IMG/VR virus record: IMGVR_UViG_3300050120_000230
Span: 1-64,000 of that record
Length of the DNA stretch: 64,000 nucleotides
Reading direction: 5' to 3' (one strand)
Within the stretch, counting starts at the first letter, position 1. Each line of letters starts with the position of its first letter. A program made the translations under genes and the position numbers. Shown here piece after piece: positions 3 to 52,639 of this stretch. The notes under the pieces are model-generated. The model was not told the origin of the DNA. It ran no database searches and saw only the letters and a program-made list of their open reading frames with translations.

Positions 3-2093
3 GCTGGCGATAGCTCCATCAAGTCGCTCTATGCGACACTCGATCAAATTCCGACCGTGACGATTGCTGAGAGCGGTGTCACGGCTGGCTTCAACATCAA
101 CAGCGTCGAGATCGACCAGTCGTGTGGACCGGGTTGGCGGAATGCCAGTTCGTATATGACTGGGATCAACATGACGATCACCGAACCGTTGGGTTCGAGC
201 CTCGTCGAAGCGATGATGAACGCCGCTATCGCGCTGAATGTCCAAGACTTCGGGAAGATGTGGTATTTCCTCGAACTCGTTTTCCAAGGCTACGACGAAG
301 ACGGAGACATCGAAACGACGCCGTTGTCTTCCTTGAACTTGGAGAACGGTGGCCGGTGGGTCTATCAGATCGCCATCACCAACATGGAAGTCAACATGAA
401 TGAGAGCGGGGCGAGCTACAAGCTCACCTGTATGCCTTATTCCATGCACGCTTTCGACGATCAGACCTGTGGCCGTGTGCCTGAAGTTCTCAGCGTCAAC
501 GGTGGAACCATCCAAGATTTCTGCAACGACTTCGCGACCAAATTGACCAAGTCTTGGACGGATCGCTATCTCGGCGAAATCTACACGTTCAAAATCAACA
601 TTCGCCCGCTGGTCGATGACAATCGGATTGCCGGTGGGTTCAAGCTCGCGCAAGGCGATTACGACCCGATCCGCAACCTGTCTCTAGACGCTGGTGACGG
701 CAAGACTCCGCACGCCCAAATTCCCGCCGGAACGACGATCAGCGATCTGATTATGTTCCTCTACTGCCACTGCGAAGACGCGCAGAAAATGATGCTGGAC
801 ACCACATCGCCACAGAACCTCGAAGACGGCGATGGCGAGACGGTCACCTACAACAAGAAGCAATATCGCGTGCCCATCGTTCCGCACGTCGAAGCGGACG
901 TGAAAGTCACCGGCTACGACCCGATCACCGGGCTCTACATGAAGGAAATTACCTACCACGTCTGGGGGTATCGTTCCTACACGACCAATCTCTCGAACAA
1001 ACAATACACGACGATGAAGGCCGATCCTTCGATCTCGGTGAAGATCGCGGATGAGCTTCGCACCCGAGGTTATCTCCGCAAGCGTTACGAGCACCGGTTC
1101 ACCGGTCTCAACACCGAAGTGCTGCGTTTCGACCTCGACTACAACTTCGCCTTCTCCACAGTCCTTCCGAAAATCACCGGCTGGCGCGAAGGGATCAACC
1201 AGACTTCAGATCATGCCAAACGTAACCCGGCGCTGACCGCGAACGCCGCGATGAATACGGCCGCTTTCCCGAACGAGACCACTGCCGGGACACCCGATGG
1301 CGATCCGCTCACGCAAGCACAATCAACGTTGGTCGCGGCGAACGATGGCATTTCGGAAGCCGAAGGCGTTGTGAACGATGAAACGGCCACTCCGGCTCAG
1401 AAGAATGCTGCGAACTCCGTGATCGCGGCGGCTAATCGTTCGAAGCAGGCAATTCAAGAACAGGTCGGTCGCATCCGTGCGAACGATCTTGCTGCACAGA
1501 AAGCATCTCGCGAACAGATCGAAGCTCAGGGTCCGGTCAACATCTATGCCGAAGACGCCGTCGTCGGCGACTCTCCGTTCAAACTGACCTACGTCCAAGG
1601 CCACGGCGAAGCATCGTCTGCTGCCGGAACGGGCTTCTTGGGTCAATGGCACCGTGGCGCCAGTCTGGCGGGGGCTGTGCTCAACCAGTTGCACGAGCCG
1701 CTCACCGAATCTCTCGCGAACATCACTCTCGAAATTCGCGGCGATCCCTACTGGATCGGATATTCGCACCTCGAACGCCGGTCCATCCTAAACGACGGTC
1801 TGAAGCACAACGCAGACTCACCGATGCCCAACTACACGGAAGGTGACTCGACGCTCGCTTTGATCCTGCGTTTCCCAAGCGGCATTGACCCAACGAGTGG
1901 CGCTCCGATCATCCGCGAAGACGATGTCTTCAACGGTCTCTATCGCGTGACTTCGATCAAGAGCGCGTTCAGCGGCGGTGAGTTCAAGCAGACGCTCGAA
2001 GCTTTCAAGCTCGAACTCATCACGATGATCCAGTCGAACAACAAGACAGGCGCCCAGCCTGCTCCCGGCGATGGGAGCACAGGCCAGCAATGA
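3..2093 (+). CDS. Virion tail/baseplate hub-like protein, 5' end outside window
   Basis: Frame is open from position 3 to TGA at 2093. C-terminal IRGDPYW and FNGLYRVTSIKSAFSGGEFKQTL resemble hub proteins; it overlaps the gp5-like gene (ATGA). Confidence 0.6.
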   Translation, partial: AGDSSIKSLYATLDQIPTVTIAESGVTAGFNINSVEIDQSCGPGWRNASSYMTGINMTITEPLGSSLVEAMMNAAIALNVQDFGKMWYFLELVFQGYDEDGDIETTPLSSLNLENGGRWVYQIAITNMEVNMNESGASYKLTCMPYSMHAFDDQTCGRVPEVLSVNGGTIQDFCNDFATKLTKSWTDRYLGEIYTFKINIRPLVDDNRIAGGFKLAQGDYDPIRNLSLDAGDGKTPHAQIPAGTTISDLIMFLYCHCEDAQKMMLDTTSPQNLEDGDGETVTYNKKQYRVPIVPHVEADVKVTGYDPITGLYMKEITYHVWGYRSYTTNLSNKQYTTMKADPSISVKIADELRTRGYLRKRYEHRFTGLNTEVLRFDLDYNFAFSTVLPKITGWREGINQTSDHAKRNPALTANAAMNTAAFPNETTAGTPDGDPLTQAQSTLVAANDGISEAEGVVNDETATPAQKNAANSVIAAANRSKQAIQEQVGRIRANDLAAQKASREQIEAQGPVNIYAEDAVVGDSPFKLTYVQGHGEASSAAGTGFLGQWHRGASLAGAVLNQLHEPLTESLANITLEIRGDPYWIGYSHLERRSILNDGLKHNADSPMPNYTEGDSTLALILRFPSGIDPTSGAPIIREDDVFNGLYRVTSIKSAFSGGEFKQTLEAFKLELITMIQSNNKTGAQPAPGDGSTGQQ

Positions 2094-4036
2094 AGCCGTC
2101 GTTCAACCCCAAAGTCTTGCCGCGTGGCTATCGCCGCGACTCGCACATGGGTCGCGTGCGGGACAGCAACATCTATGTCGGCGTAGTCAAGCGCAACGAC
2201 GACGGACAACGCATGGGCCGTCTGGCCGTGTGGATTCCAGAAATCGGCGGCGATCCGAACAATCCGCAGAACTGGTTCATCGTCAGTTACGCGAGCCCGT
2301 TCGCCGGTGTGACGAACCCCAACGCTCTCGTCGAAGATGCCACGAACCTCGACGGCACCCAGCAGTCGTATGGCTTCTGGATGAATCCGCCGGACCTTGA
2401 GAACCAAGTTCTGGTGTGCTTCGCCAATGGCGACACCGCCTTGGGATTCTGGTTCGCCTGCCTCTATCAGCAGAACATGAACCACATGGTGCCCGGCATC
2501 GCGACCGGCACTCCGACCGAAGATGGCAACTACTGTTCCAGTCAGCCGCCGGTGGCGGAATACAACAAGTGGAGCAAAGAGAACCCAGACAAGCCGAAGA
2601 GGGCTGCCTACACACCTCTGGCCAATGGTCTATCCGAACAAGGTCTTTTCTCTGATCCTGAACGTGGCCCGGCCGATTCGTCTGCTCGCCGCGAAGCACC
2701 GTCGAAGGTCTACGGCTGGCTGACGCCGCGTGGCAATCAAGTCTACGTCGATGACAACCCGGCCAACGAGTTCATCCGTATGCGAACTCGTTCCGGCGCC
2801 CAAGTGCTGGTCAACGAAACGACGGGCTTCGTCTACATCAACTCGAAGAACGGCAACTCGTGGGTCGAGATTTCCGACAAGGGTGTGGACATCTATTCCA
2901 AGGGTGCAGTCAGCCTGCGCTCTGAAGGTTCGCTGAACCTGCACGCCGATGGCTCCCTGAACATCGAAGCCGATGGTAACCTGAACCTGCGCGCCGGAGG
3001 CAACCTGACCCTTCAGAGCGCCCACCATTCGCACTTCGCGGGCAACGGCGATCTCGTTCTCGATTTCGGTGGAACTGCCAGCACCAAGGCTGGCGGAAAC
3101 ATTTTGCTGGCGGCTACTGGCGCTGTGCGCTCTGGCGCCGGTGGCGACATCACGGCTTCGTCCGGTGGTTCGAACATCCGCTCCGCTTCGGTCATCTTCG
3201 ACAATGCTTCGACAGCGGCCCCGCCTGCGAACGCTCCGTCTGCCAAGGTTGAGCAGCCGCGCGATCTACCGGAAGTGAACGGTTCGGCTCCCTGCTACCA
3301 ACAGAGCACGCGTAAAACGATCACGCGCCGGATGCCGACGCATGAACCGTTCGTCAACCACCCGAAGGCTGGGGGCTCTGGCGATCAATCGAACAACCCG
3401 GACCTTAAGAAATCCGACGAATACGCTTCAGCGGCGGACGCCAATTCGGTCGCCAATTCGAGCACCGTTCCGAACGACGACAACACGAGCTTCACGGATG
3501 ACGACGTGTCGTGGCTGACGGTCTGCCTGCTCACCGAAGCCGGTGGTCTTGGCGATGACATGCTGGCCGCTGTTGGACAGGTAGTGATGAACCGTTCTTC
3601 AGTCGGCTTCGCAGGCAATGTGCGAAACGATGCGTGGTCGGGCATCAAGAAATACGTGCTGGCCTATGCCGCATTCTCGTTTTTCTGGTCATCCAATGGC
3701 CGTAGCCTCGACGTGGGCGGTGGCAAGCCTGCTCGCTCTGGTTCGCCGCCCCGCCTGACGATCCCGCCCGCATTGTTCGCGGCCGGTGAGAAGAAGGGCA
3801 TCGATAAGATCAAGTCGTCGCAGGGCTCAACCGAATGGAACCACTGCAAGCAGATCGCGACGCAGCTTCTCGCAGGCACCTACAACGCCAGCACGGCTGT
3901 GGCGCCGATCAAAGCCAACAAACGGTGCACGATGTATGTGAACGCTAGCACGGCTTCGCCGGTGTGGGCTGTGCCGAGCAAGTTCGTCACTCAGGTCGGC
4001 CATCCGCGTCTGTCACACAGTTTCTACCTGCAATAA
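2090..4036 (+). CDS. Baseplate central spike (gp5-like) with C-terminal SleB/Hydrolase_2-type cell wall hydrolase
   Basis: N-terminal OB-fold motif (GVVKRNDD..RMGRLAVWIP, SYGFW..PP), beta-helix repeats (GSLNLHADGSLNIEADGNLNLRAGG), PTHEPF, then LTVCLLTEAGG..AVGQVVMNR. Confidence 0.85.
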   Translation: MKPSFNPKVLPRGYRRDSHMGRVRDSNIYVGVVKRNDDGQRMGRLAVWIPEIGGDPNNPQNWFIVSYASPFAGVTNPNALVEDATNLDGTQQSYGFWMNPPDLENQVLVCFANGDTALGFWFACLYQQNMNHMVPGIATGTPTEDGNYCSSQPPVAEYNKWSKENPDKPKRAAYTPLANGLSEQGLFSDPERGPADSSARREAPSKVYGWLTPRGNQVYVDDNPANEFIRMRTRSGAQVLVNETTGFVYINSKNGNSWVEISDKGVDIYSKGAVSLRSEGSLNLHADGSLNIEADGNLNLRAGGNLTLQSAHHSHFAGNGDLVLDFGGTASTKAGGNILLAATGAVRSGAGGDITASSGGSNIRSASVIFDNASTAAPPANAPSAKVEQPRDLPEVNGSAPCYQQSTRKTITRRMPTHEPFVNHPKAGGSGDQSNNPDLKKSDEYASAADANSVANSSTVPNDDNTSFTDDDVSWLTVCLLTEAGGLGDDMLAAVGQVVMNRSSVGFAGNVRNDAWSGIKKYVLAYAAFSFFWSSNGRSLDVGGGKPARSGSPPRLTIPPALFAAGEKKGIDKIKSSQGSTEWNHCKQIATQLLAGTYNASTAVAPIKANKRCTMYVNASTASPVWAVPSKFVTQVGHPRLSHSFYLQ

Positions 4037-4048
4037 TCGACTCGGTAA

Positions 4049-4396
4049 TTGCGGTGCGGTATAAGCACTGTAGTGAAAATCTTCACCAATCATTCGGGGA
4101 CGACGCAGGATACGTTCAGTATCGGCAAGCGTGGGGTCGAGCTTATTCGTGGCTATGGTTCGCCACATCAGCACCATGCTCACGCTACGGTCGGCAGTCT
4201 CTACTTCCAGACCGAACTAGGTATCTTGTTGGTGAAACGCCCATCCGGTGAATGGGACGCCATGGCCACCCAAGCGTCAGTTCAGCTTTCGATGGTCATG
4301 GTCTCGCAGACCATCGAGCGATGCGTTCGCATGGCACTCTGGACCATGGCAGGACTGGTGGTCTTCGTGACGCTGATGCTCGTGTTTACTCGGTGA
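4049..4396 (+). CDS. Hypothetical protein with C-terminal transmembrane helix
   Basis: ORF follows gp5 and has a hydrophobic C-terminus; the start may be the GTG near 4073. Confidence 0.5.
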   Translation: MRCGISTVVKIFTNHSGTTQDTFSIGKRGVELIRGYGSPHQHHAHATVGSLYFQTELGILLVKRPSGEWDAMATQASVQLSMVMVSQTIERCVRMALWTMAGLVVFVTLMLVFTR

Positions 4397-4790
4397 ACTC
4401 GTGCTGGAACAGAAGTAGCAGCACCCAGTCTTTTTGGAACTGGCCGAGATCGCCGCTCACTTTCTTGATCTGGAAGATGCCCGCACGCACATGGTCCTTG
4501 AAATCGACGGCTCCCCACCCACCGGCATGAACTTGCGGGTGATAGTCGCAGATCAGCGTGTCGGTCGAGAGTTGGATGTGCTGCGGGGCAAGCCAACGAC
4601 TGTGGACAAGATGAAACTCCAAACTCCACATGACGCCCTCGGAGAGATGCTCTCCGAGTAGGCGTTCGAGTTTGAAATTGTTCGCGTGATGGGCCGTGAG
4701 CCTCAGACCGGCGATCATACCGGTCTGACGAGGTTGCTTCCAGACGTGGTTGTAGATAGCCGCTACGTCTTTCGAAGTGGCGGCGACCAT
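4386..4790 (-). CDS. Hypothetical protein
   Basis: ATG overlaps the stop of the upstream minus-strand gene. Confidence 0.5.
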   Translation of the reverse strand: MVAATSKDVAAIYNHVWKQPRQTGMIAGLRLTAHHANNFKLERLLGEHLSEGVMWSLEFHLVHSRWLAPQHIQLSTDTLICDYHPQVHAGGWGAVDFKDHVRAGIFQIKKVSGDLGQFQKDWVLLLLFQHEFTE

Positions 4791-5002
4791 CAGACCAGAT
4801 CGTGCTTCCGCAGCGCCGGGCGAATGACGAGGAAGTAGATCGGCATCAGCGAGAAACCGACGAACTGGTAGGTCCCGGCCATGTCGCCAGCCATGTATTT
4901 GTGGTCGGCGCCGATGACGAAGAACGCGAACACGGCGACTTGAATCAGCGGGAACGCCCAGAAATCGCACGCCTTGTTGAAGAGTCGTTGGAAGGTGCTC
5001 AT
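4790..5002 (-). CDS. Small membrane protein
   Basis: Two hydrophobic segments; AGGAG upstream of the ATG at 5002. Confidence 0.6.
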   Translation of the reverse strand: MSTFQRLFNKACDFWAFPLIQVAVFAFFVIGADHKYMAGDMAGTYQFVGFSLMPIYFLVIRPALRKHDLV

Positions 5003-5013
5003 GGTTTGTGCTC

Positions 5014-5355
5014 CTAGTTTTCGGATTGCCAAATCAGGTCTTCGTATTTCTCGATGAGATCGGGATTTCCCAGACGCATCATCTGCACGAGCTTGCGGAG
5101 GCGAACGATGTCGTCGTCGGTGTCGATCATTTCGAACTCGGCCCACCCCACGGTATTGCCCGCTTCGTCGGTGAGGCGCTTCATCGGCCACTTGCCCTTG
5201 ACCAGTAGATTGGTCGGGCTCAGCGGAAGTTGATCGTCCCCCAGACGACGGAGGATGCGGCCGACTTCCATGCCCGCGATATCAACGCCGTTGGCGTTCT
5301 TGAAGGCCGGGCTCTCGCATTCGATGCTGAGCGTGAAGGTAAGGCGCTTGCCCAT
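5014..5355 (-). CDS. Hypothetical protein
   Basis: Starts MGKRLTFTLSIECESPAF; coupled to the upstream stop. Confidence 0.65.
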   Translation of the reverse strand: MGKRLTFTLSIECESPAFKNANGVDIAGMEVGRILRRLGDDQLPLSPTNLLVKGKWPMKRLTDEAGNTVGWAEFEMIDTDDDIVRLRKLVQMMRLGNPDLIEKYEDLIWQSEN

Positions 5356-5564
5356 CAGTTCACCTTGGGGAGGATTTGCGAGCCGTCTTCCGGCACGGGG
5401 ACGATTTGCAGGAGACCTTTGGCGTGCAGGCGGCCGAACATGCCGCCCGTGCCACCGCTCTCGGCCCACGTATCGGCGTCGATCTGCTGGACAGCGAAGG
5501 TCTGACCACGGCCAGCGGCGCCGAGGGCTACAGCGGCGATGAAGCCTTTGCGTTGACGAGCCAT
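5355..5564 (-). CDS. Hypothetical protein
   Basis: AGGAG SD and a TTGACG promoter-like sequence upstream. Confidence 0.6.
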   Translation of the reverse strand: MARQRKGFIAAVALGAAGRGQTFAVQQIDADTWAESGGTGGMFGRLHAKGLLQIVPVPEDGSQILPKVN

Positions 5565-5666
5565 GCGTGATCTCCTGTGCAGTTCAGAATGTCATTCTCT
5601 CATCAAAGTCGAATCCGTCAACAATACTTTAGTGCATGGGTCCATGCATTAGGCTACGGTGCGGAA

Positions 5667-5792
5667 ATGAGAACCAATTACCCCATCCCGCCCGCACCGA
5701 AGCCCGGCATGTCCGACCCCCGTTCGACTGGGCGGCCTACGCCGACTCGGATTCGCCGACCGCAAATGTCTGACCCTCGGAGCACGCGTTAA
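5667..5792 (+). CDS. Small Pro/Arg-rich peptide with duplicated MSDPRST
   Basis: The heptapeptide occurs twice with different synonymous codons. Confidence 0.45.
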   Translation: MRTNYPIPPAPKPGMSDPRSTGRPTPTRIRRPQMSDPRSTR

Positions 5793-6090
5793 GCTCGTCG
5801 AGGATGTCCTGAAAGTCGTTGTTCGTCCAATCGAGTGGTTGGTAGTAGCGAAGGTAATTGTTCGTCACGTCGAACCCACCACGGCGGGGCCAAGGGCGAA
5901 GGCTACACCCTTGAGCACTTCAAGGAGCTAAAGAGCCGCCCGCCGGGCCTGATGGCCGAGTTGGATCGCCTTCACAGAGTGTTTTCCACTCTGCGTCGGT
6001 TAGTCGCCAGAAATATCCGAACTGCCCAACGTATACGTATCTGCTCTGAGTCTGCTTGGGCTCGGTGTATCGCCTGCGTCTGCGTGTCAT
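5737..6090 (-). pseudogene. Gene disrupted by an internal 80-bp inversion (5887-5966)
   Basis: AGGAGG SD and ATG at 6090, in-frame TGA at 5920-5922 inside the segment. Flipping the segment gives a stop-free 117-aa ORF. Confidence 0.7.
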
Positions 6091-6187
6091 GAGAAAGTGC
6101 CTCCTACCTATAATGGGGTCGCGAGAAGGCCATTATGTGCAGGCCATTTTTCAACTTTCTCGGAGTGTGGATTTTTCGTCACAGTAT

Positions 6188-6203
6188 TTTTGGTTGACCA
6201 AAA
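6188..6203. promoter_or_regulatory. Palindromic TTGG-N4-CCAA site overlapping a TTGACC -35-like box
   Basis: TTTTGGTTGACCAAAA; related sites at 14666, 51204, 54666 and 60804. Confidence 0.5.
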
Positions 6204-6225
6204 TCTCGAAATCACTACAAAGGCG

Positions 6226-7260
6226 ATGATGAACAGTGTTGTCAAACCCGCGAAGTTTCTGATCGCTATAGTGACGCTTTGCTTCGCGACGATGGCGGCT
6301 GCTCAGAACACTCCGAGGGCTACAGCGTCACAAGGACAGTGGGCTCACTATTCGTCGGCTCAACCATTGATCGCCGTGGCGCCCACGCCAGAGGTCCCCA
6401 AGCCCGTTCCGGTGGTAGTTCCCGCACCTCACATCCAAAATCCCATCGAGCACGCGTTGCAAGTGGCCTTGGACGATTATCGCGCTGGCAAAACCAGTGA
6501 CGACGTGATCGCACGATATGGCGGAACACCATCCGCTTATGGCCACATGCTGGAATTGAACGTCGCCCGCGCACGGGCGCTGCCTTCGGTGTTCCCAGAA
6601 CGCTACGTCGTGGTGAACATCCCCTCGCAAACACTTGATCTTTACGTCGATGGCAAACGTGCCTTGACCATGCGGGTCATCACTGGTCGGCCGGATGCTC
6701 CTACGCCCACGATGGTGACCAACATCACCACGGCCATCTACAATCCCTACTGGAACGTCCCGTGGGAAATGGTGCGTGACACCTATTCGAAACGGGCCAT
6801 GGCCAACTCGCATTACCTGAAGTTGATGCACATGGAAGCACTCGACGGTTGGGGCGCGGACGCCAAGGTCATCCCAGAATCACAGGTTCCGTGGAAGGAC
6901 GTGGCGGCGGGGACGATCTACCAACGCGTTCGGCAGCGTCCGGGTGACGATAACATGATGGGCATCGTCAAGTTCGAGTTGGCGGACAACAGCAAGGGCA
7001 TCTATCTTCACGACACCCCGTTGCGGAAAAACTTCAACGGCACATGGGTTGTGCTTCACGCGATGAGTTCCGGTTGCATCCGTCTCTTCGACGCCAAGAC
7101 ACTCGCCAATGCCTTGATGGGAACGCAGCCCGCGTTTGCCGACACGGAACATCGCGTTCTGCTGACGAAGCCGGTGCCGATTTTCATCACCTATTTCACA
7201 GCGATGCCCAGTGAAACAGGATTGGTCTTCTACCATGACGGCTACGACGCCGATAAATAA
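6226..7260 (+). CDS. L,D-transpeptidase (YkuD domain, YcbB-like), secreted
   Basis: Signal peptide; VVVNIPSQTL, VITGRP..PTP, NPYWNVP, RQRPG..NMMGIVKF, catalytic IYLHDTP...SSGCIRL. Confidence 0.9.
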   Translation: MMNSVVKPAKFLIAIVTLCFATMAAAQNTPRATASQGQWAHYSSAQPLIAVAPTPEVPKPVPVVVPAPHIQNPIEHALQVALDDYRAGKTSDDVIARYGGTPSAYGHMLELNVARARALPSVFPERYVVVNIPSQTLDLYVDGKRALTMRVITGRPDAPTPTMVTNITTAIYNPYWNVPWEMVRDTYSKRAMANSHYLKLMHMEALDGWGADAKVIPESQVPWKDVAAGTIYQRVRQRPGDDNMMGIVKFELADNSKGIYLHDTPLRKNFNGTWVVLHAMSSGCIRLFDAKTLANALMGTQPAFADTEHRVLLTKPVPIFITYFTAMPSETGLVFYHDGYDADK

Positions 7261-7263
7261 TCA

Positions 7264-7737
7264 GTGCGCGAATACATCGACATTCTGGCCGAAGCTCAGA
7301 GCCAAATCCCACCCGAGCTTGCTGCCCAAATCCTTTCAGACCGGCTTTGCAAGCACGGGGTGAAACTGGCGCCGAGCGCACGTCTGTGGCGTGGCGAGGG
7401 TTCTGAAGGCGGAAGCGGGTTCGCCACCTATGGCCGAGGGCTCTACTTCACCGCTGATCGCAAAGTCGCGGCCGAATATGCCGGAGACGATGGCGAGATC
7501 GTCGAAATCGCTCGGGCCTATCTTCCCGACAATGCGCTGCGTTTCGACACCACAAATGATTTCCAGATTTGGAAGCAGAGGGCTTACACGCTGCTGGGCT
7601 TCAGAGGCCCGCAGGAGTTCGCAGCCGCATACGATGATCTTGGCGTTTTCATCCGCACCCTTGATCCGACCATCGACGGCATCCAGATGTTCACGGGCAA
7701 AGACTCCGTCTTCGTCCTCTACGGAATGGACGAGTAA
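7264..7737 (+). CDS. ADP-ribosyltransferase-like late protein with N-terminal tag
   Basis: LWRGE...YGRGLYFTADRKVAAEYA resembles the ART core; TAAATA 4 nt upstream. Confidence 0.55.
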   Translation: MREYIDILAEAQSQIPPELAAQILSDRLCKHGVKLAPSARLWRGEGSEGGSGFATYGRGLYFTADRKVAAEYAGDDGEIVEIARAYLPDNALRFDTTNDFQIWKQRAYTLLGFRGPQEFAAAYDDLGVFIRTLDPTIDGIQMFTGKDSVFVLYGMDE

Positions 7738-52487: not shown

Positions 52488-52559
52488 GTGCCCGTAGTTC
52501 AGTGGAAGAACGCCTTTTTTCTAAATTGGTCGTCGCAGGTTCGAACCCTGCCGGGCATT
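52488..52559 (+). tRNA. tRNA-Arg(UCU), imperfect anticodon stem
   Basis: Acceptor GTGCCCG/CGGGCAT, D arm GTTC/GAAC, T arm GCAGG-TTCGAAC-CCTGC, anticodon TCT at 52520-52522; two U-U mismatches; no encoded CCA. Confidence 0.8.
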
Positions 52560-52563
52560 CAAT

Positions 52564-52639
52564 GATCCTTTAGCTCAACAGGAAGAGCGCATCTTTCCTA
52601 AAGATGAGGTTGCTGGTTCGAGCCCAGCAAGGGTCGCCA
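52564..52639 (+). tRNA. tRNA-Arg(CCU)
   Basis: Full cloverleaf, anticodon arm CATCT-TTCCTAA-AGATG, A20, discriminator G, encoded CCA. Confidence 0.95.

What the first reader, a model, noticed from the sequence alone, without database searches (positions are those of the whole stretch)
5737..6090. 80-bp micro-inversion switches a gene off; flipping it restores a 117-aa ORF
Seen: the minus-strand ORF (AGGAGG, ATG 6090) stops at TGA 5920-5922, while the plus strand of 5887-5966 reads protein-like (GAKGEGYTLEHFKELKSRPPGLMAELD). That segment is flanked by inverted GGCG (5883-5886) and CGCC (5967-5970). Inverting it gives ...WKTLCEGGAKGEGYTLEHFKELKSRPPGLMAELDRRGGFDVTNNYLRYYQPLDW... with no stop until TAG 5737-5739. 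A hairpin CAGAGTG-TTTTC-CACTCTG (5975-5993) abuts one breakpoint. Inference: an intragenic on/off switch, a fixed template-switch mutation, or an amplification/assembly artefact. No invertase is visible in the window.
Basis: partly seen in the sequence, partly recalled or inferred. Interest (0 to 1): 0.7.

Follow-up and report, generated by a model that had tools for sequence, protein, structure and literature searches.

The report
Phage gene broken by micro-inversion
Inside a small conserved gene of a very large peat-soil phage, about 84 bases have been copied in backwards, which breaks the gene in most genomes of the sample while roughly a quarter appear to keep the intact form; this is a known kind of replication error caught while still polymorphic, not a programmed switch.

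Summary
The minus-strand frame from ATG 6090 to TAG 5737 has one in-frame stop, TGA at 5920-5922. Twenty homologues (85-130 aa) were found using only the broken reading. They align to the gene's two ends on the minus strand and to its middle on the plus strand (5880-5978). A profile of these homologues scores the flipped protein at 110 bits against 69.5 bits as it stands.

In the one public run that holds this phage, contigs in the window's orientation have word depth about 20. It carries T where the window has C.

That letter fits a single replication template switch. An ancestral GGCG / reversed spacer / CACC becomes the window's GGCG / spacer / CGCC if 5887-5970 is replaced by the reverse complement of 5883-5966. 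No strict inversion does this.

The arms are 4 nt. No resolvase or integrase is found in the 415 kb held. The two forms differ by a letter that recombination would not change. So this is a loss-of-function polymorphism, not a switch and not an assembly artefact.

Caveat: the second junction of the intact form was not seen. The gene family is unnamed and occurs among anti-defence genes.

The parts
5737..6090 (-). Whole disrupted gene: 117-codon frame from ATG 6088-6090 to TAG 5737-5739, interrupted by one in-frame TGA
   Evidence: The profile of 20 homologues matches 5779-6051(-) at 68.8 bits, E 1.1e-19, with 1 TGA inside.
6100..6105 (-). Shine-Dalgarno AGGAGG, 9 nt upstream of the ATG
   Evidence: Read directly from the sequence.
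5971..6090 (-). Collinear 5' part of the gene (residues 1-40). Conserved YVYVGQFGxxWRLTxxEW block, preceded by a 16-residue Arg-rich extension that the homologues lack.
   Evidence: Homologue alignments.
5967..5970 (.). Right arm CGCC. The minority form in the sample reads CACC here (A at 5968, seen as T on the gene strand).
   Evidence: Loose letters of the 61-nt contig. Letter-by-letter check.
5887..5966 (+). Inverted spacer. It encodes the conserved middle of the protein (GAKGEGYTL..F.ELKSRPPG) on the wrong strand.
   Evidence: Codon scores. tblastn of 8 homologues hits the plus strand at 5868/5883-5942/5963, with P0008 at E 4.5e-10. Profile hit at 5880-5978(+), model positions 28-59, E 4e-4.
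5920..5922 (-). In-frame TGA created by reading the inverted spacer backwards. It truncates the product to 56 aa.
5883..5886 (.). Left arm GGCG
5740..5882 (-). Collinear 3' part of the gene: conserved YYxPLDW..DF..L.EL block and an acidic tail.
   Evidence: Codon score +13.5 bits in the gene's frame. Homologue alignments.
5975..5993 (.). 7-bp stem, 5-nt loop hairpin, 4 nt from the right breakpoint. A possible stalling site that favoured the template switch (inference).
   Evidence: Inverted repeat I11. Present in both the MFE and centroid DNA folds; the region's z-score is -2.39.

Best explanation
The window shows the majority allele of a small accessory gene of a very large tailed phage. That allele was knocked out by one replication template-switch event.

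In the ancestral allele the gene was intact. The spacer was in the opposite orientation, flanked by an imperfect 4-nt inverted repeat: GGCG on the left and CACC on the right. During replication the nascent strand left its template after GGCG (5886). It copied the complementary strand back across the spacer and through the left arm, then returned at 5971. As a result 5887-5970 was replaced by the reverse complement of 5883-5966. This inverted the 80-nt spacer and at the same time made the right arm a perfect CGCC.

Read in the gene's frame, the inverted spacer gives 15 unrelated residues and then a TGA. The product is a 56-aa stump that lacks two of the family's four invariant residues (the Leu and the Pro) encoded in the spacer, and the C-terminal half. 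The intact ancestral allele persists in the same peat sample at roughly a quarter of the phage's depth.

Shown here: the inversion, its breakpoints, the gene family, the majority depth, and one junction of the minority form with its T.

Inferred: the template-switch mechanism, the direction of change, the left junction of the minority form, and loss of function.
For: 1. Homology.
- phmmer with the broken reading (X at the stop) found 20 proteins of 85-130 aa, aligned collinearly over query residues 13-106.
- They were chosen without any knowledge of the flipped middle. Even so, a profile of 19 of them scores the flipped protein at 110.4 bits and the window reading at 69.5 bits.
- The family's invariant Leu and Pro fall in the spacer and are present only in the flipped form.
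- tblastn and the six-frame profile search both place the middle of the family on the plus strand and the ends on the minus strand.
- There is no second copy in the 415-kb record.

2. Reads.
- In run X1, contigs in the window's orientation cover both junctions at word depth 19.7-22.5.
- A 61-nt contig of depth 6 equals rc(5969-5998) + T + 5886-5915.
- 61 = 2k-1 for k = 31. All 31-mers are distinct within a Logan run (PMC12424806). The middle letter therefore had to differ from C, and it is T.
- This contig reads in frame as ...CEGGAKGEGYTLE.

3. Mechanism.
- An in-silico ancestor (GGCG + reversed spacer + CACC) contains the observed contig.
- Replacing its 5887-5970 with the reverse complement of its 5883-5966 gives the window exactly.
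- No strict inversion of that ancestor does.
- Arm homogenisation together with spacer inversion is the described outcome of template switching between short imperfect inverted repeats (PMC8604942; general model in PMC5453318).

4. No Resolvase or Phage_integrase domain was found in the record.
Against: - Only one of the two junctions of the intact form is seen. The 26 further 31-mers it should contribute at the left junction are absent from the contigs, and the majority contigs are not broken at 5886 or 5970. Graph simplification by the assembler could have removed that low-depth path, but this is unproven.
- Contigs are not reads, so the 6:20 ratio is rough.
- The arms (4 nt, 3 of 4 matched before the event) are much shorter, and the spacer (80 nt) much longer, than in the documented yeast spacer inversions (arms over 9 bp, spacers of a few bp; PMC8604942).
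- The run is probably the sample the record was assembled from, so there is no second population.
- No close relative of the phage was found to show the ancestral state directly.
Confidence: 0.7

Rival explanations
1. The inversion is real and fixed. The 61-nt depth-6 contig is not an intact allele but a fold-back or strand-switch chimera, from library preparation or a replication intermediate, that joins the minus strand at 5969 to the plus strand at 5886.
For: Only this one junction is seen. The graph needs nothing else: rc(right contig) -> T -> 5886... uses only majority 31-mers apart from the 31 new ones. A hairpin sits 4 nt from the junction.
Against: The junction lies exactly where homology says the ancestral junction was, and it is in frame. 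A chimera made from the window allele would be expected to carry the templated C, not T. By contrast, T is exactly what a one-step template switch from an ancestor requires. A depth of 6 against about 20 is far above random chimera rates. No other inverted-junction contig appears in the 3.9-kb control stretch 2000-5885.
Confidence: 0.13
2. An ordinary two-break inversion (break and rejoin, or recombination at the 4-nt repeat) plus an unrelated neighbouring point difference between two co-existing strains, rather than a template switch.
For: A more divergent relative of the phage is present in the same run (151-nt contig, depth 2.2, 10 mismatches at 3931-4081), so strain-level point differences do exist. 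T against C is a synonymous third-position change of a Gly codon.
Against: It needs two events where one suffices, with the second falling by chance inside the 4-nt arm and making it a perfect repeat. No recombinase was found.
Confidence: 0.1
3. A programmed, reversible intragenic inverton: phase variation that turns the gene on and off in the phage population.
For: Both orientations appear in one sample. Intragenic invertons that introduce premature stops are known in bacteria (PMC10028968). The gene family keeps company with anti-defence genes, where bet-hedging would make sense.
Against: The arms are only 4 nt. In the one inverton whose repeats are described in the passages read from that paper (thiC), the inverted repeat has 11 positions, and site-specific recombinases need such repeats to act on. 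No Resolvase or Phage_integrase domain is present in the 415 kb held. The two orientations differ by a letter in the arm, which conservative recombination cannot produce. The minority form cannot be derived from the window form by copying.
Confidence: 0.05
4. There is no inversion. The region is two short genes or a gene with a simple nonsense mutation, and the protein-like plus-strand reading is chance. Alternatively, the window orientation is an assembly artefact.
For: The two halves are in one frame with a single TGA between them. Many arbitrary inversions also give open frames. Antisense frames often score well in this 55% GC genome.
Against: The flipped middle gains 41 bits against a family profile and supplies the invariant Leu and Pro. 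Eight of eight homologues hit the plus strand there. Both window junctions are carried by 31-mers at depth about 20 in an independent assembly.
Confidence: 0.02

Closest known systems
Template-switch mutations between short imperfect inverted repeats: quasipalindrome correction (Ripley's model in phage T4), inverted-repeat arm homogenisation with spacer inversion (PMC8604942), and the four-point short-range template-switch model (PMC5453318)
   Same: A stretch is replaced in place by its own reverse complement. It is flanked by a short inverted repeat that is imperfect before the event and perfect after it. One event accounts for both the inversion and the neighbouring base change. A hairpin lies beside a switch point. 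The event falls inside coding DNA.
   Different: The arms are only 4 nt and the spacer is 80 nt, whereas the documented yeast coding-region spacer inversions have arms over 9 bp and spacers of a few bp. Here the event destroys the gene rather than changing one or two residues. It is also seen as a within-sample polymorphism of an uncultured huge phage.
Invertase-mediated intragenic invertons of bacteria (PMC10028968)
   Same: A short (tens of bp) inversion lies wholly inside a gene and introduces a premature stop. Both orientations are detectable in one sample.
   Different: There are no recognisable recombinase-sized repeats, no recombinase gene in the record, and the arm sequence differs between the orientations. 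Nothing indicates reversibility.
The unnamed protein family of P0002-P0031 (85-130 aa; no Pfam or PHROG family)
   Same: The restored 117-aa product aligns over about 90 residues at 110 bits and has all four invariant residues (W, L, P, W).
   Different: The window's copy has a 16-residue Arg-rich N-terminal extension and is broken. The family's function is untested. Its only clues are its context among anti-defence and polyvalent-protein genes, and one fusion to an Acb1 domain.

Membership tests
Template-switch (inverted-repeat spacer-inversion) mutation | The changed stretch is the exact reverse complement, in place, of the ancestral stretch | tested here: met
   Homologues align to the plus strand for the middle and the minus strand for the ends, with length conserved. 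The minority contig gives one ancestral junction letter for letter.
Template-switch (inverted-repeat spacer-inversion) mutation | A short inverted repeat flanks the inverted stretch | tested here: met
   GGCG at 5883-5886 and CGCC at 5967-5970. At only 4 nt this is not significant on its own.
Template-switch (inverted-repeat spacer-inversion) mutation | Arm homogenisation: the repeat is imperfect in the ancestor and perfect in the derived allele, and one copying event explains all the differences | tested here: met
   The minority form has CACC and the window has CGCC. Replacing 5887-5970 with rc(5883-5966) of the model ancestor reproduces the window, and no strict inversion does. This assumes the ancestor's unseen left junction is GGCG.
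Template-switch (inverted-repeat spacer-inversion) mutation | Both junctions of the ancestral allele are documented | tested here: inconclusive
   Only the right (gene-5') junction is seen in contigs. The left one is absent from the contigs and from public contig collections.
Template-switch (inverted-repeat spacer-inversion) mutation | Arises during replication by polymerase strand switching | not testable with these tools
   This needs mutation-accumulation or reporter experiments.
Invertase-mediated inverton (phase variation) | Inverted repeats long enough to be a recombinase site | tested here: not met
   The arms are 4 nt, and no longer imperfect repeat spans the breakpoints. In the passages read from the inverton paper, the one repeat described has 11 positions (PMC10028968).
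Invertase-mediated inverton (phase variation) | A serine or tyrosine recombinase available | tested here: not met
   PF00239 and PF00589 gave no match in the 415,409-bp record, and the controls were positive. The record is estimated to be 72% complete, and a host enzyme cannot be excluded.
Invertase-mediated inverton (phase variation) | Both orientations in one population with identical arm sequences (conservative recombination) | tested here: not met
   One junction of the other orientation is present, but it carries T for C inside the arm.
Unnamed small-protein family (P0002-P0031) | Collinear match over the roughly 90-residue core with the invariant W, L, P and W | tested here: met
   The restored form scores 110.4 bits over profile positions 2-90. 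The window reading keeps only the two Trp residues.
Any named Pfam or PHROG family | Score above the family threshold | tested here: not met
   The best hits are Arch_fla_DE at E 0.026 and phrog_17398 at E 0.03, both below threshold. The homologues also have no family.

The most novel reading that the evidence does not exclude
The inversion is an enzyme-independent but selected toggle. Repeated template switching at this hairpin-flanked site would flip the spacer back and forth, so the huge phage keeps both an 'on' and an 'off' version of a gene linked to anti-defence. For example, this could evade a host defence that senses the protein. That would be phase variation in a phage without an invertase.
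Probability: 0.04. Interest if true: 0.7.

Novelty: new member of a known kind. Interest (0 to 1): 0.3.

Why it matters
The finding shows that reading a sequence alone can pick out a genuine micro-inversion, and that homology together with k-mer graph evidence can settle such a case.

- **Annotation.** The locus should be annotated as one pseudogene allele of a conserved gene, not as two short ORFs.
- **Mutation biology.** It is a clean natural example, from an uncultured huge phage, of a single template switch that inverts a long (80-nt) spacer between minimal (4-nt) arms and perfects the repeat. The ancestral allele apparently still segregates in the same sample.
- **The gene family.** As a by-product, the work defines a small unnamed protein family of phages and other mobile elements. 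Its members sit among anti-defence genes (Acb1 fusion; ART-PolyVal, Tad6 and NAD-salvage neighbours), so it is a reasonable candidate for functional testing.

None of this changes a general principle.

Tried and rejected
- **Close DNA or protein relatives of the phage.** blastn against phage records gave no match. A word-based protein search with the flipped protein found nothing. The search for related loci in viral contigs found nothing with the flipped protein or with either neighbouring gene.
- **Restored junctions in public contigs.** Exact-pattern scans for both restored junctions in metagenome contigs, and for junction 1 in viral contigs, found nothing.
- **Other runs.** Two searches returned only run X1, which is held as contigs and not as reads. 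Read-level counts, linkage of T with orientation, and the second junction could therefore not be obtained.
- **Genome-wide scan for further micro-inversions by codon log-odds**. It was not discriminating: antisense frames score nearly as well as sense frames in this genome, and the scan gave 267 candidate clusters. It was dropped, so whether this is a one-off remains untested.
- **Alternative genetic code for the TGA.** Not pursued. TGA is the commonest stop of the long ORFs (55 of 110), no suppressor tRNA is present in the window, and the residues either side of the TGA do not match the family.
- **Function by fold.** The AlphaFold model of homologue P0008 (pLDDT 84) has no meaningful match in the PDB or in AlphaFold-DB clusters. 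The ESM Atlas features search gave only unnamed clusters scoring under 0.9.
- **Alternative breakpoints.** The 7-nt repeat 5882-5888/5939-5945 and the 6-nt repeat 5898-5903/5968-5973 also give open frames. They do not fit the observed contig junction.

Full report
**What is in the sequence**

The window is the first 64 kb of a 415,409-bp linear virus record. The record has 55% GC, an estimated completeness of 72%, and no close relative in the phage collection. It comes from a tailed phage: a baseplate-spike OB domain lies at 2090-4036.

On the minus strand an ORF starts at ATG 6090, 9 nt after AGGAGG, and stops at TGA 5920-5922 after 56 codons. The same frame then runs open to TAG 5737-5739. 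GGCG (5883-5886) and CGCC (5967-5970) flank an 80-nt stretch. A 7-bp hairpin lies at 5975-5993.

An in-place inversion cannot change the frame, and 1884 of 4875 arbitrary inversions at the site also give an open frame. Restoring an ORF is therefore not evidence of an inversion by itself.

**Internal evidence**

I built a codon log-odds model from 110 long ORFs of the record.

| Stretch | Frame | Score (bits) |
|---|---|---|
| 5887-5966 | plus frame | +12.2 |
| 5887-5966 | gene's frame | -27.8 |
| 5740-5886 | gene's frame | +13.5 |

None of 7632 in-frame windows of long ORFs scores as low as -27.8. The largest antisense-minus-sense gap among them is 19.6 bits, against 40 here. The 5' part, 5967-6090, scores poorly in every frame. 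It uses rare codons and has an Arg-rich extension.

**Homology settles the question**

I searched 1.84 billion representative proteins with the broken reading, putting X at the TGA (P0001). The query therefore held 27 wrong residues in its middle. Twenty proteins matched (E 1.7e-9 to 8e-4). They are 85-130 aa long, apart from one 1216-aa protein, and each aligned in a single collinear stretch.

- The conserved middle of the homologues reads C-E-x-G-x-x-G-x-G-Y-D-L...L-x-x-R-P. The flipped window sequence reads CEGGAKGEGYTLEHFKELKSRPPG.
- A profile of 19 homologues scores the flipped protein at 110.4 bits and the window reading at 69.5 bits.
- Two of the family's four invariant residues (Leu, Pro) lie in the spacer and exist only in the flipped form.
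- tblastn with eight homologues puts their residues about 26-51 on the plus strand (5868/5883 to 5942/5963; P0008 at E 4.5e-10, 56% identity). Their ends fall on the minus strand.
- The tool's own six-frame profile search of the whole record finds exactly two hits: 5779-6051(-) with one TGA, and 5880-5978(+) covering model positions 28-59. There is no paralogue elsewhere.

The inversion is real.

**What the sample holds**

Only one public run (X1, a peat metagenome and probably the source sample) holds the phage, and it is kept as k = 31 contigs.

| Contig | Length | Word depth | Window coverage |
|---|---|---|---|
| Left contig | 18.3 kb | 19.7 | ends at 5915 |
| Middle contig | 113 nt | 20.1 | 5886-5998, window orientation |
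| Right contig | 7.1 kb | 22.5 | starts at 5969 |
| Minority contig | 61 nt | 6 | rc(5969-5998), one letter, then 5886-5915 |

- The length 61 equals 2k-1. All 31-mers are distinct within a run's contigs (PMC12424806). The middle letter of the minority contig therefore had to differ from the C that both flanks would predict.
- Laying the run on 2000-5968 exposed the letter: it is T.
- On the gene strand this contig reads ...TGT GAA GGT GGG GCC AAG GGC..., that is CEGGAKG.
- The window orientation is therefore backed by read k-mers at about 20x and is not an assembly artefact.
- A form with the restored junction is present at roughly a quarter of the total depth.
- The 3.9-kb control stretch to the left shows no other inverted-junction contig. 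It shows only a 151-nt, depth-2.2 contig with 10 mismatches, from a more distant relative.

**Mechanism**

In plus-strand terms the minority form has CACC where the window has CGCC. I modelled the ancestor as GGCG + reversed spacer + CACC.

- The model contains the observed contig.
- Replacing its 5887-5970 with the reverse complement of its 5883-5966 yields the window, letter for letter.
- No strict inversion of any interval does so.

This is what a replication template switch produces. The nascent strand leaves after the left arm, copies the complementary strand back through the spacer and the left arm, and returns. The spacer is inverted and the imperfect repeat becomes perfect. This pairing of arm homogenisation with spacer inversion is described for short inverted repeats in coding DNA (PMC8604942), and more generally in the short-range template-switch model (PMC5453318).

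The direction of change also follows. The A/T of the minority form cannot be copied from anywhere in the window allele, and the minority orientation is the one that matches the family. The hairpin 4 nt from the right breakpoint may have favoured the switch, though that is inference.

The case is unusual in having very short arms (4 nt, 3 of 4 matched beforehand) and a long spacer (80 nt).

**Why this is not a switch**

- The arms are far too short for a recombinase site.
- No Resolvase or Phage_integrase domain occurs in the 415 kb, and the control searches were positive.
- The arm letter differs between the two orientations, which conservative site-specific recombination would not cause.
- The minority form is not a revertant of the window form.
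- Known intragenic invertons rest on recombinases that recognise a pair of inverted repeats (PMC10028968).

**The main weakness**

The intact allele should also contribute 26 unique 31-mers at its other junction. No such contig is present, and the majority contigs are not broken there.

The assembler simplifies the graph. From my memory of its defaults, it removes short low-coverage connecting paths at a coverage ratio of about 4, which is close to the 20:6 seen here. The loss is therefore plausible but unproven.

The alternative is that the 61-nt contig is a fold-back chimera. I rate this lower, for three reasons. A chimera made from the window allele should carry C. The junction coincides with the homology-defined ancestral junction. 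And a depth of 6 is high for a chimera.

**What the gene is**

The family has no Pfam or PHROG model. A confident AlphaFold model of a member (pLDDT 84; two beta-hairpins, short helices and a long C-terminal helix) has no match in the PDB or in AlphaFold-DB clusters.

Members lie in phage-like contigs of small ORFs and in mobile elements:

- P0002 lies near NAMPT and NMN-adenylyltransferase/Nudix genes.
- P0028 lies on a 597-kb contig.
- P0029 lies near T2SSE, ParB_N and Prok_Ub genes in a Steroidobacteraceae assembly.
- P0018 carries the domain at residues 599-682 of a 1216-aa protein, after an Acb1 anti-CBASS domain. Its neighbours include a giant ART-PolyVal protein and a Tad6 gene.

My inference, held with low confidence, is that this is an accessory module of the anti-defence or host-takeover repertoire. 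That would make its loss tolerable, or even favoured on some hosts.

In the window the gene is the first of a leftward group. It diverges from a YkuD L,D-transpeptidase gene.

**Verdict**

The feature is a genuine micro-inversion, best read as a single template-switch loss-of-function mutation. It is the majority allele in the sample, with the intact allele probably still present. It is a new instance of a known kind of mutation. Interest is modest, with a small bonus for the unnamed gene family.

Noticed in passing
window 7264-7737 (+): The 157-aa ORF next to the locus has a weak, sub-threshold Pfam hit to ART-PolyVal, the ADP-ribosyltransferase of polyvalent proteins (E 0.041). The same domain family neighbours a homologue of the broken gene in L008.
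   Followed up: partly
window 6097-7260 (+), likely start near 6226: A phage-encoded YkuD L,D-transpeptidase domain protein (E 9e-22) with a hydrophobic N-terminus, transcribed divergently from the broken gene.
   Followed up: no
window 3931-4081: Run X1 holds a 151-nt contig of depth 2.2 with 10 mismatches to the window. A more divergent relative of the phage therefore co-occurs in the sample.
   Followed up: no
L008 5001-8651 (protein P0018): A 1216-aa protein carries an Acb1 anti-CBASS domain (residues 367-513) followed by a copy of this family's domain (599-682). It is flanked by an 1852-aa DUF5710/ART-PolyVal protein and a Tad6 gene, an apparent anti-defence island.
   Followed up: partly
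L003 1-1879 and 5001-5354: The closest homologue, P0002, lies about 3 kb from NAMPT and CTP_transf_like/NUDIX genes (NAD salvage) on a phage-like contig.
   Followed up: no
window 5868-5901: An unrelated 20.9-kb contig of depth 54 in run X1 shares 34 nt (3 mismatches) with this stretch. It inflates the summed depth there and has no bearing on the inversion.
   Followed up: yes
window 52488-52639: Two adjacent tRNA-Arg genes (anticodons TCT and CCT), which read the AGA and AGG codons.
   Followed up: no
window 5967-6090 (-): The gene's first 40 codons score poorly in every frame (-14.6 bits in the gene's own frame). They begin with a 16-residue Arg-rich extension that is absent from all homologues.
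   Followed up: partly
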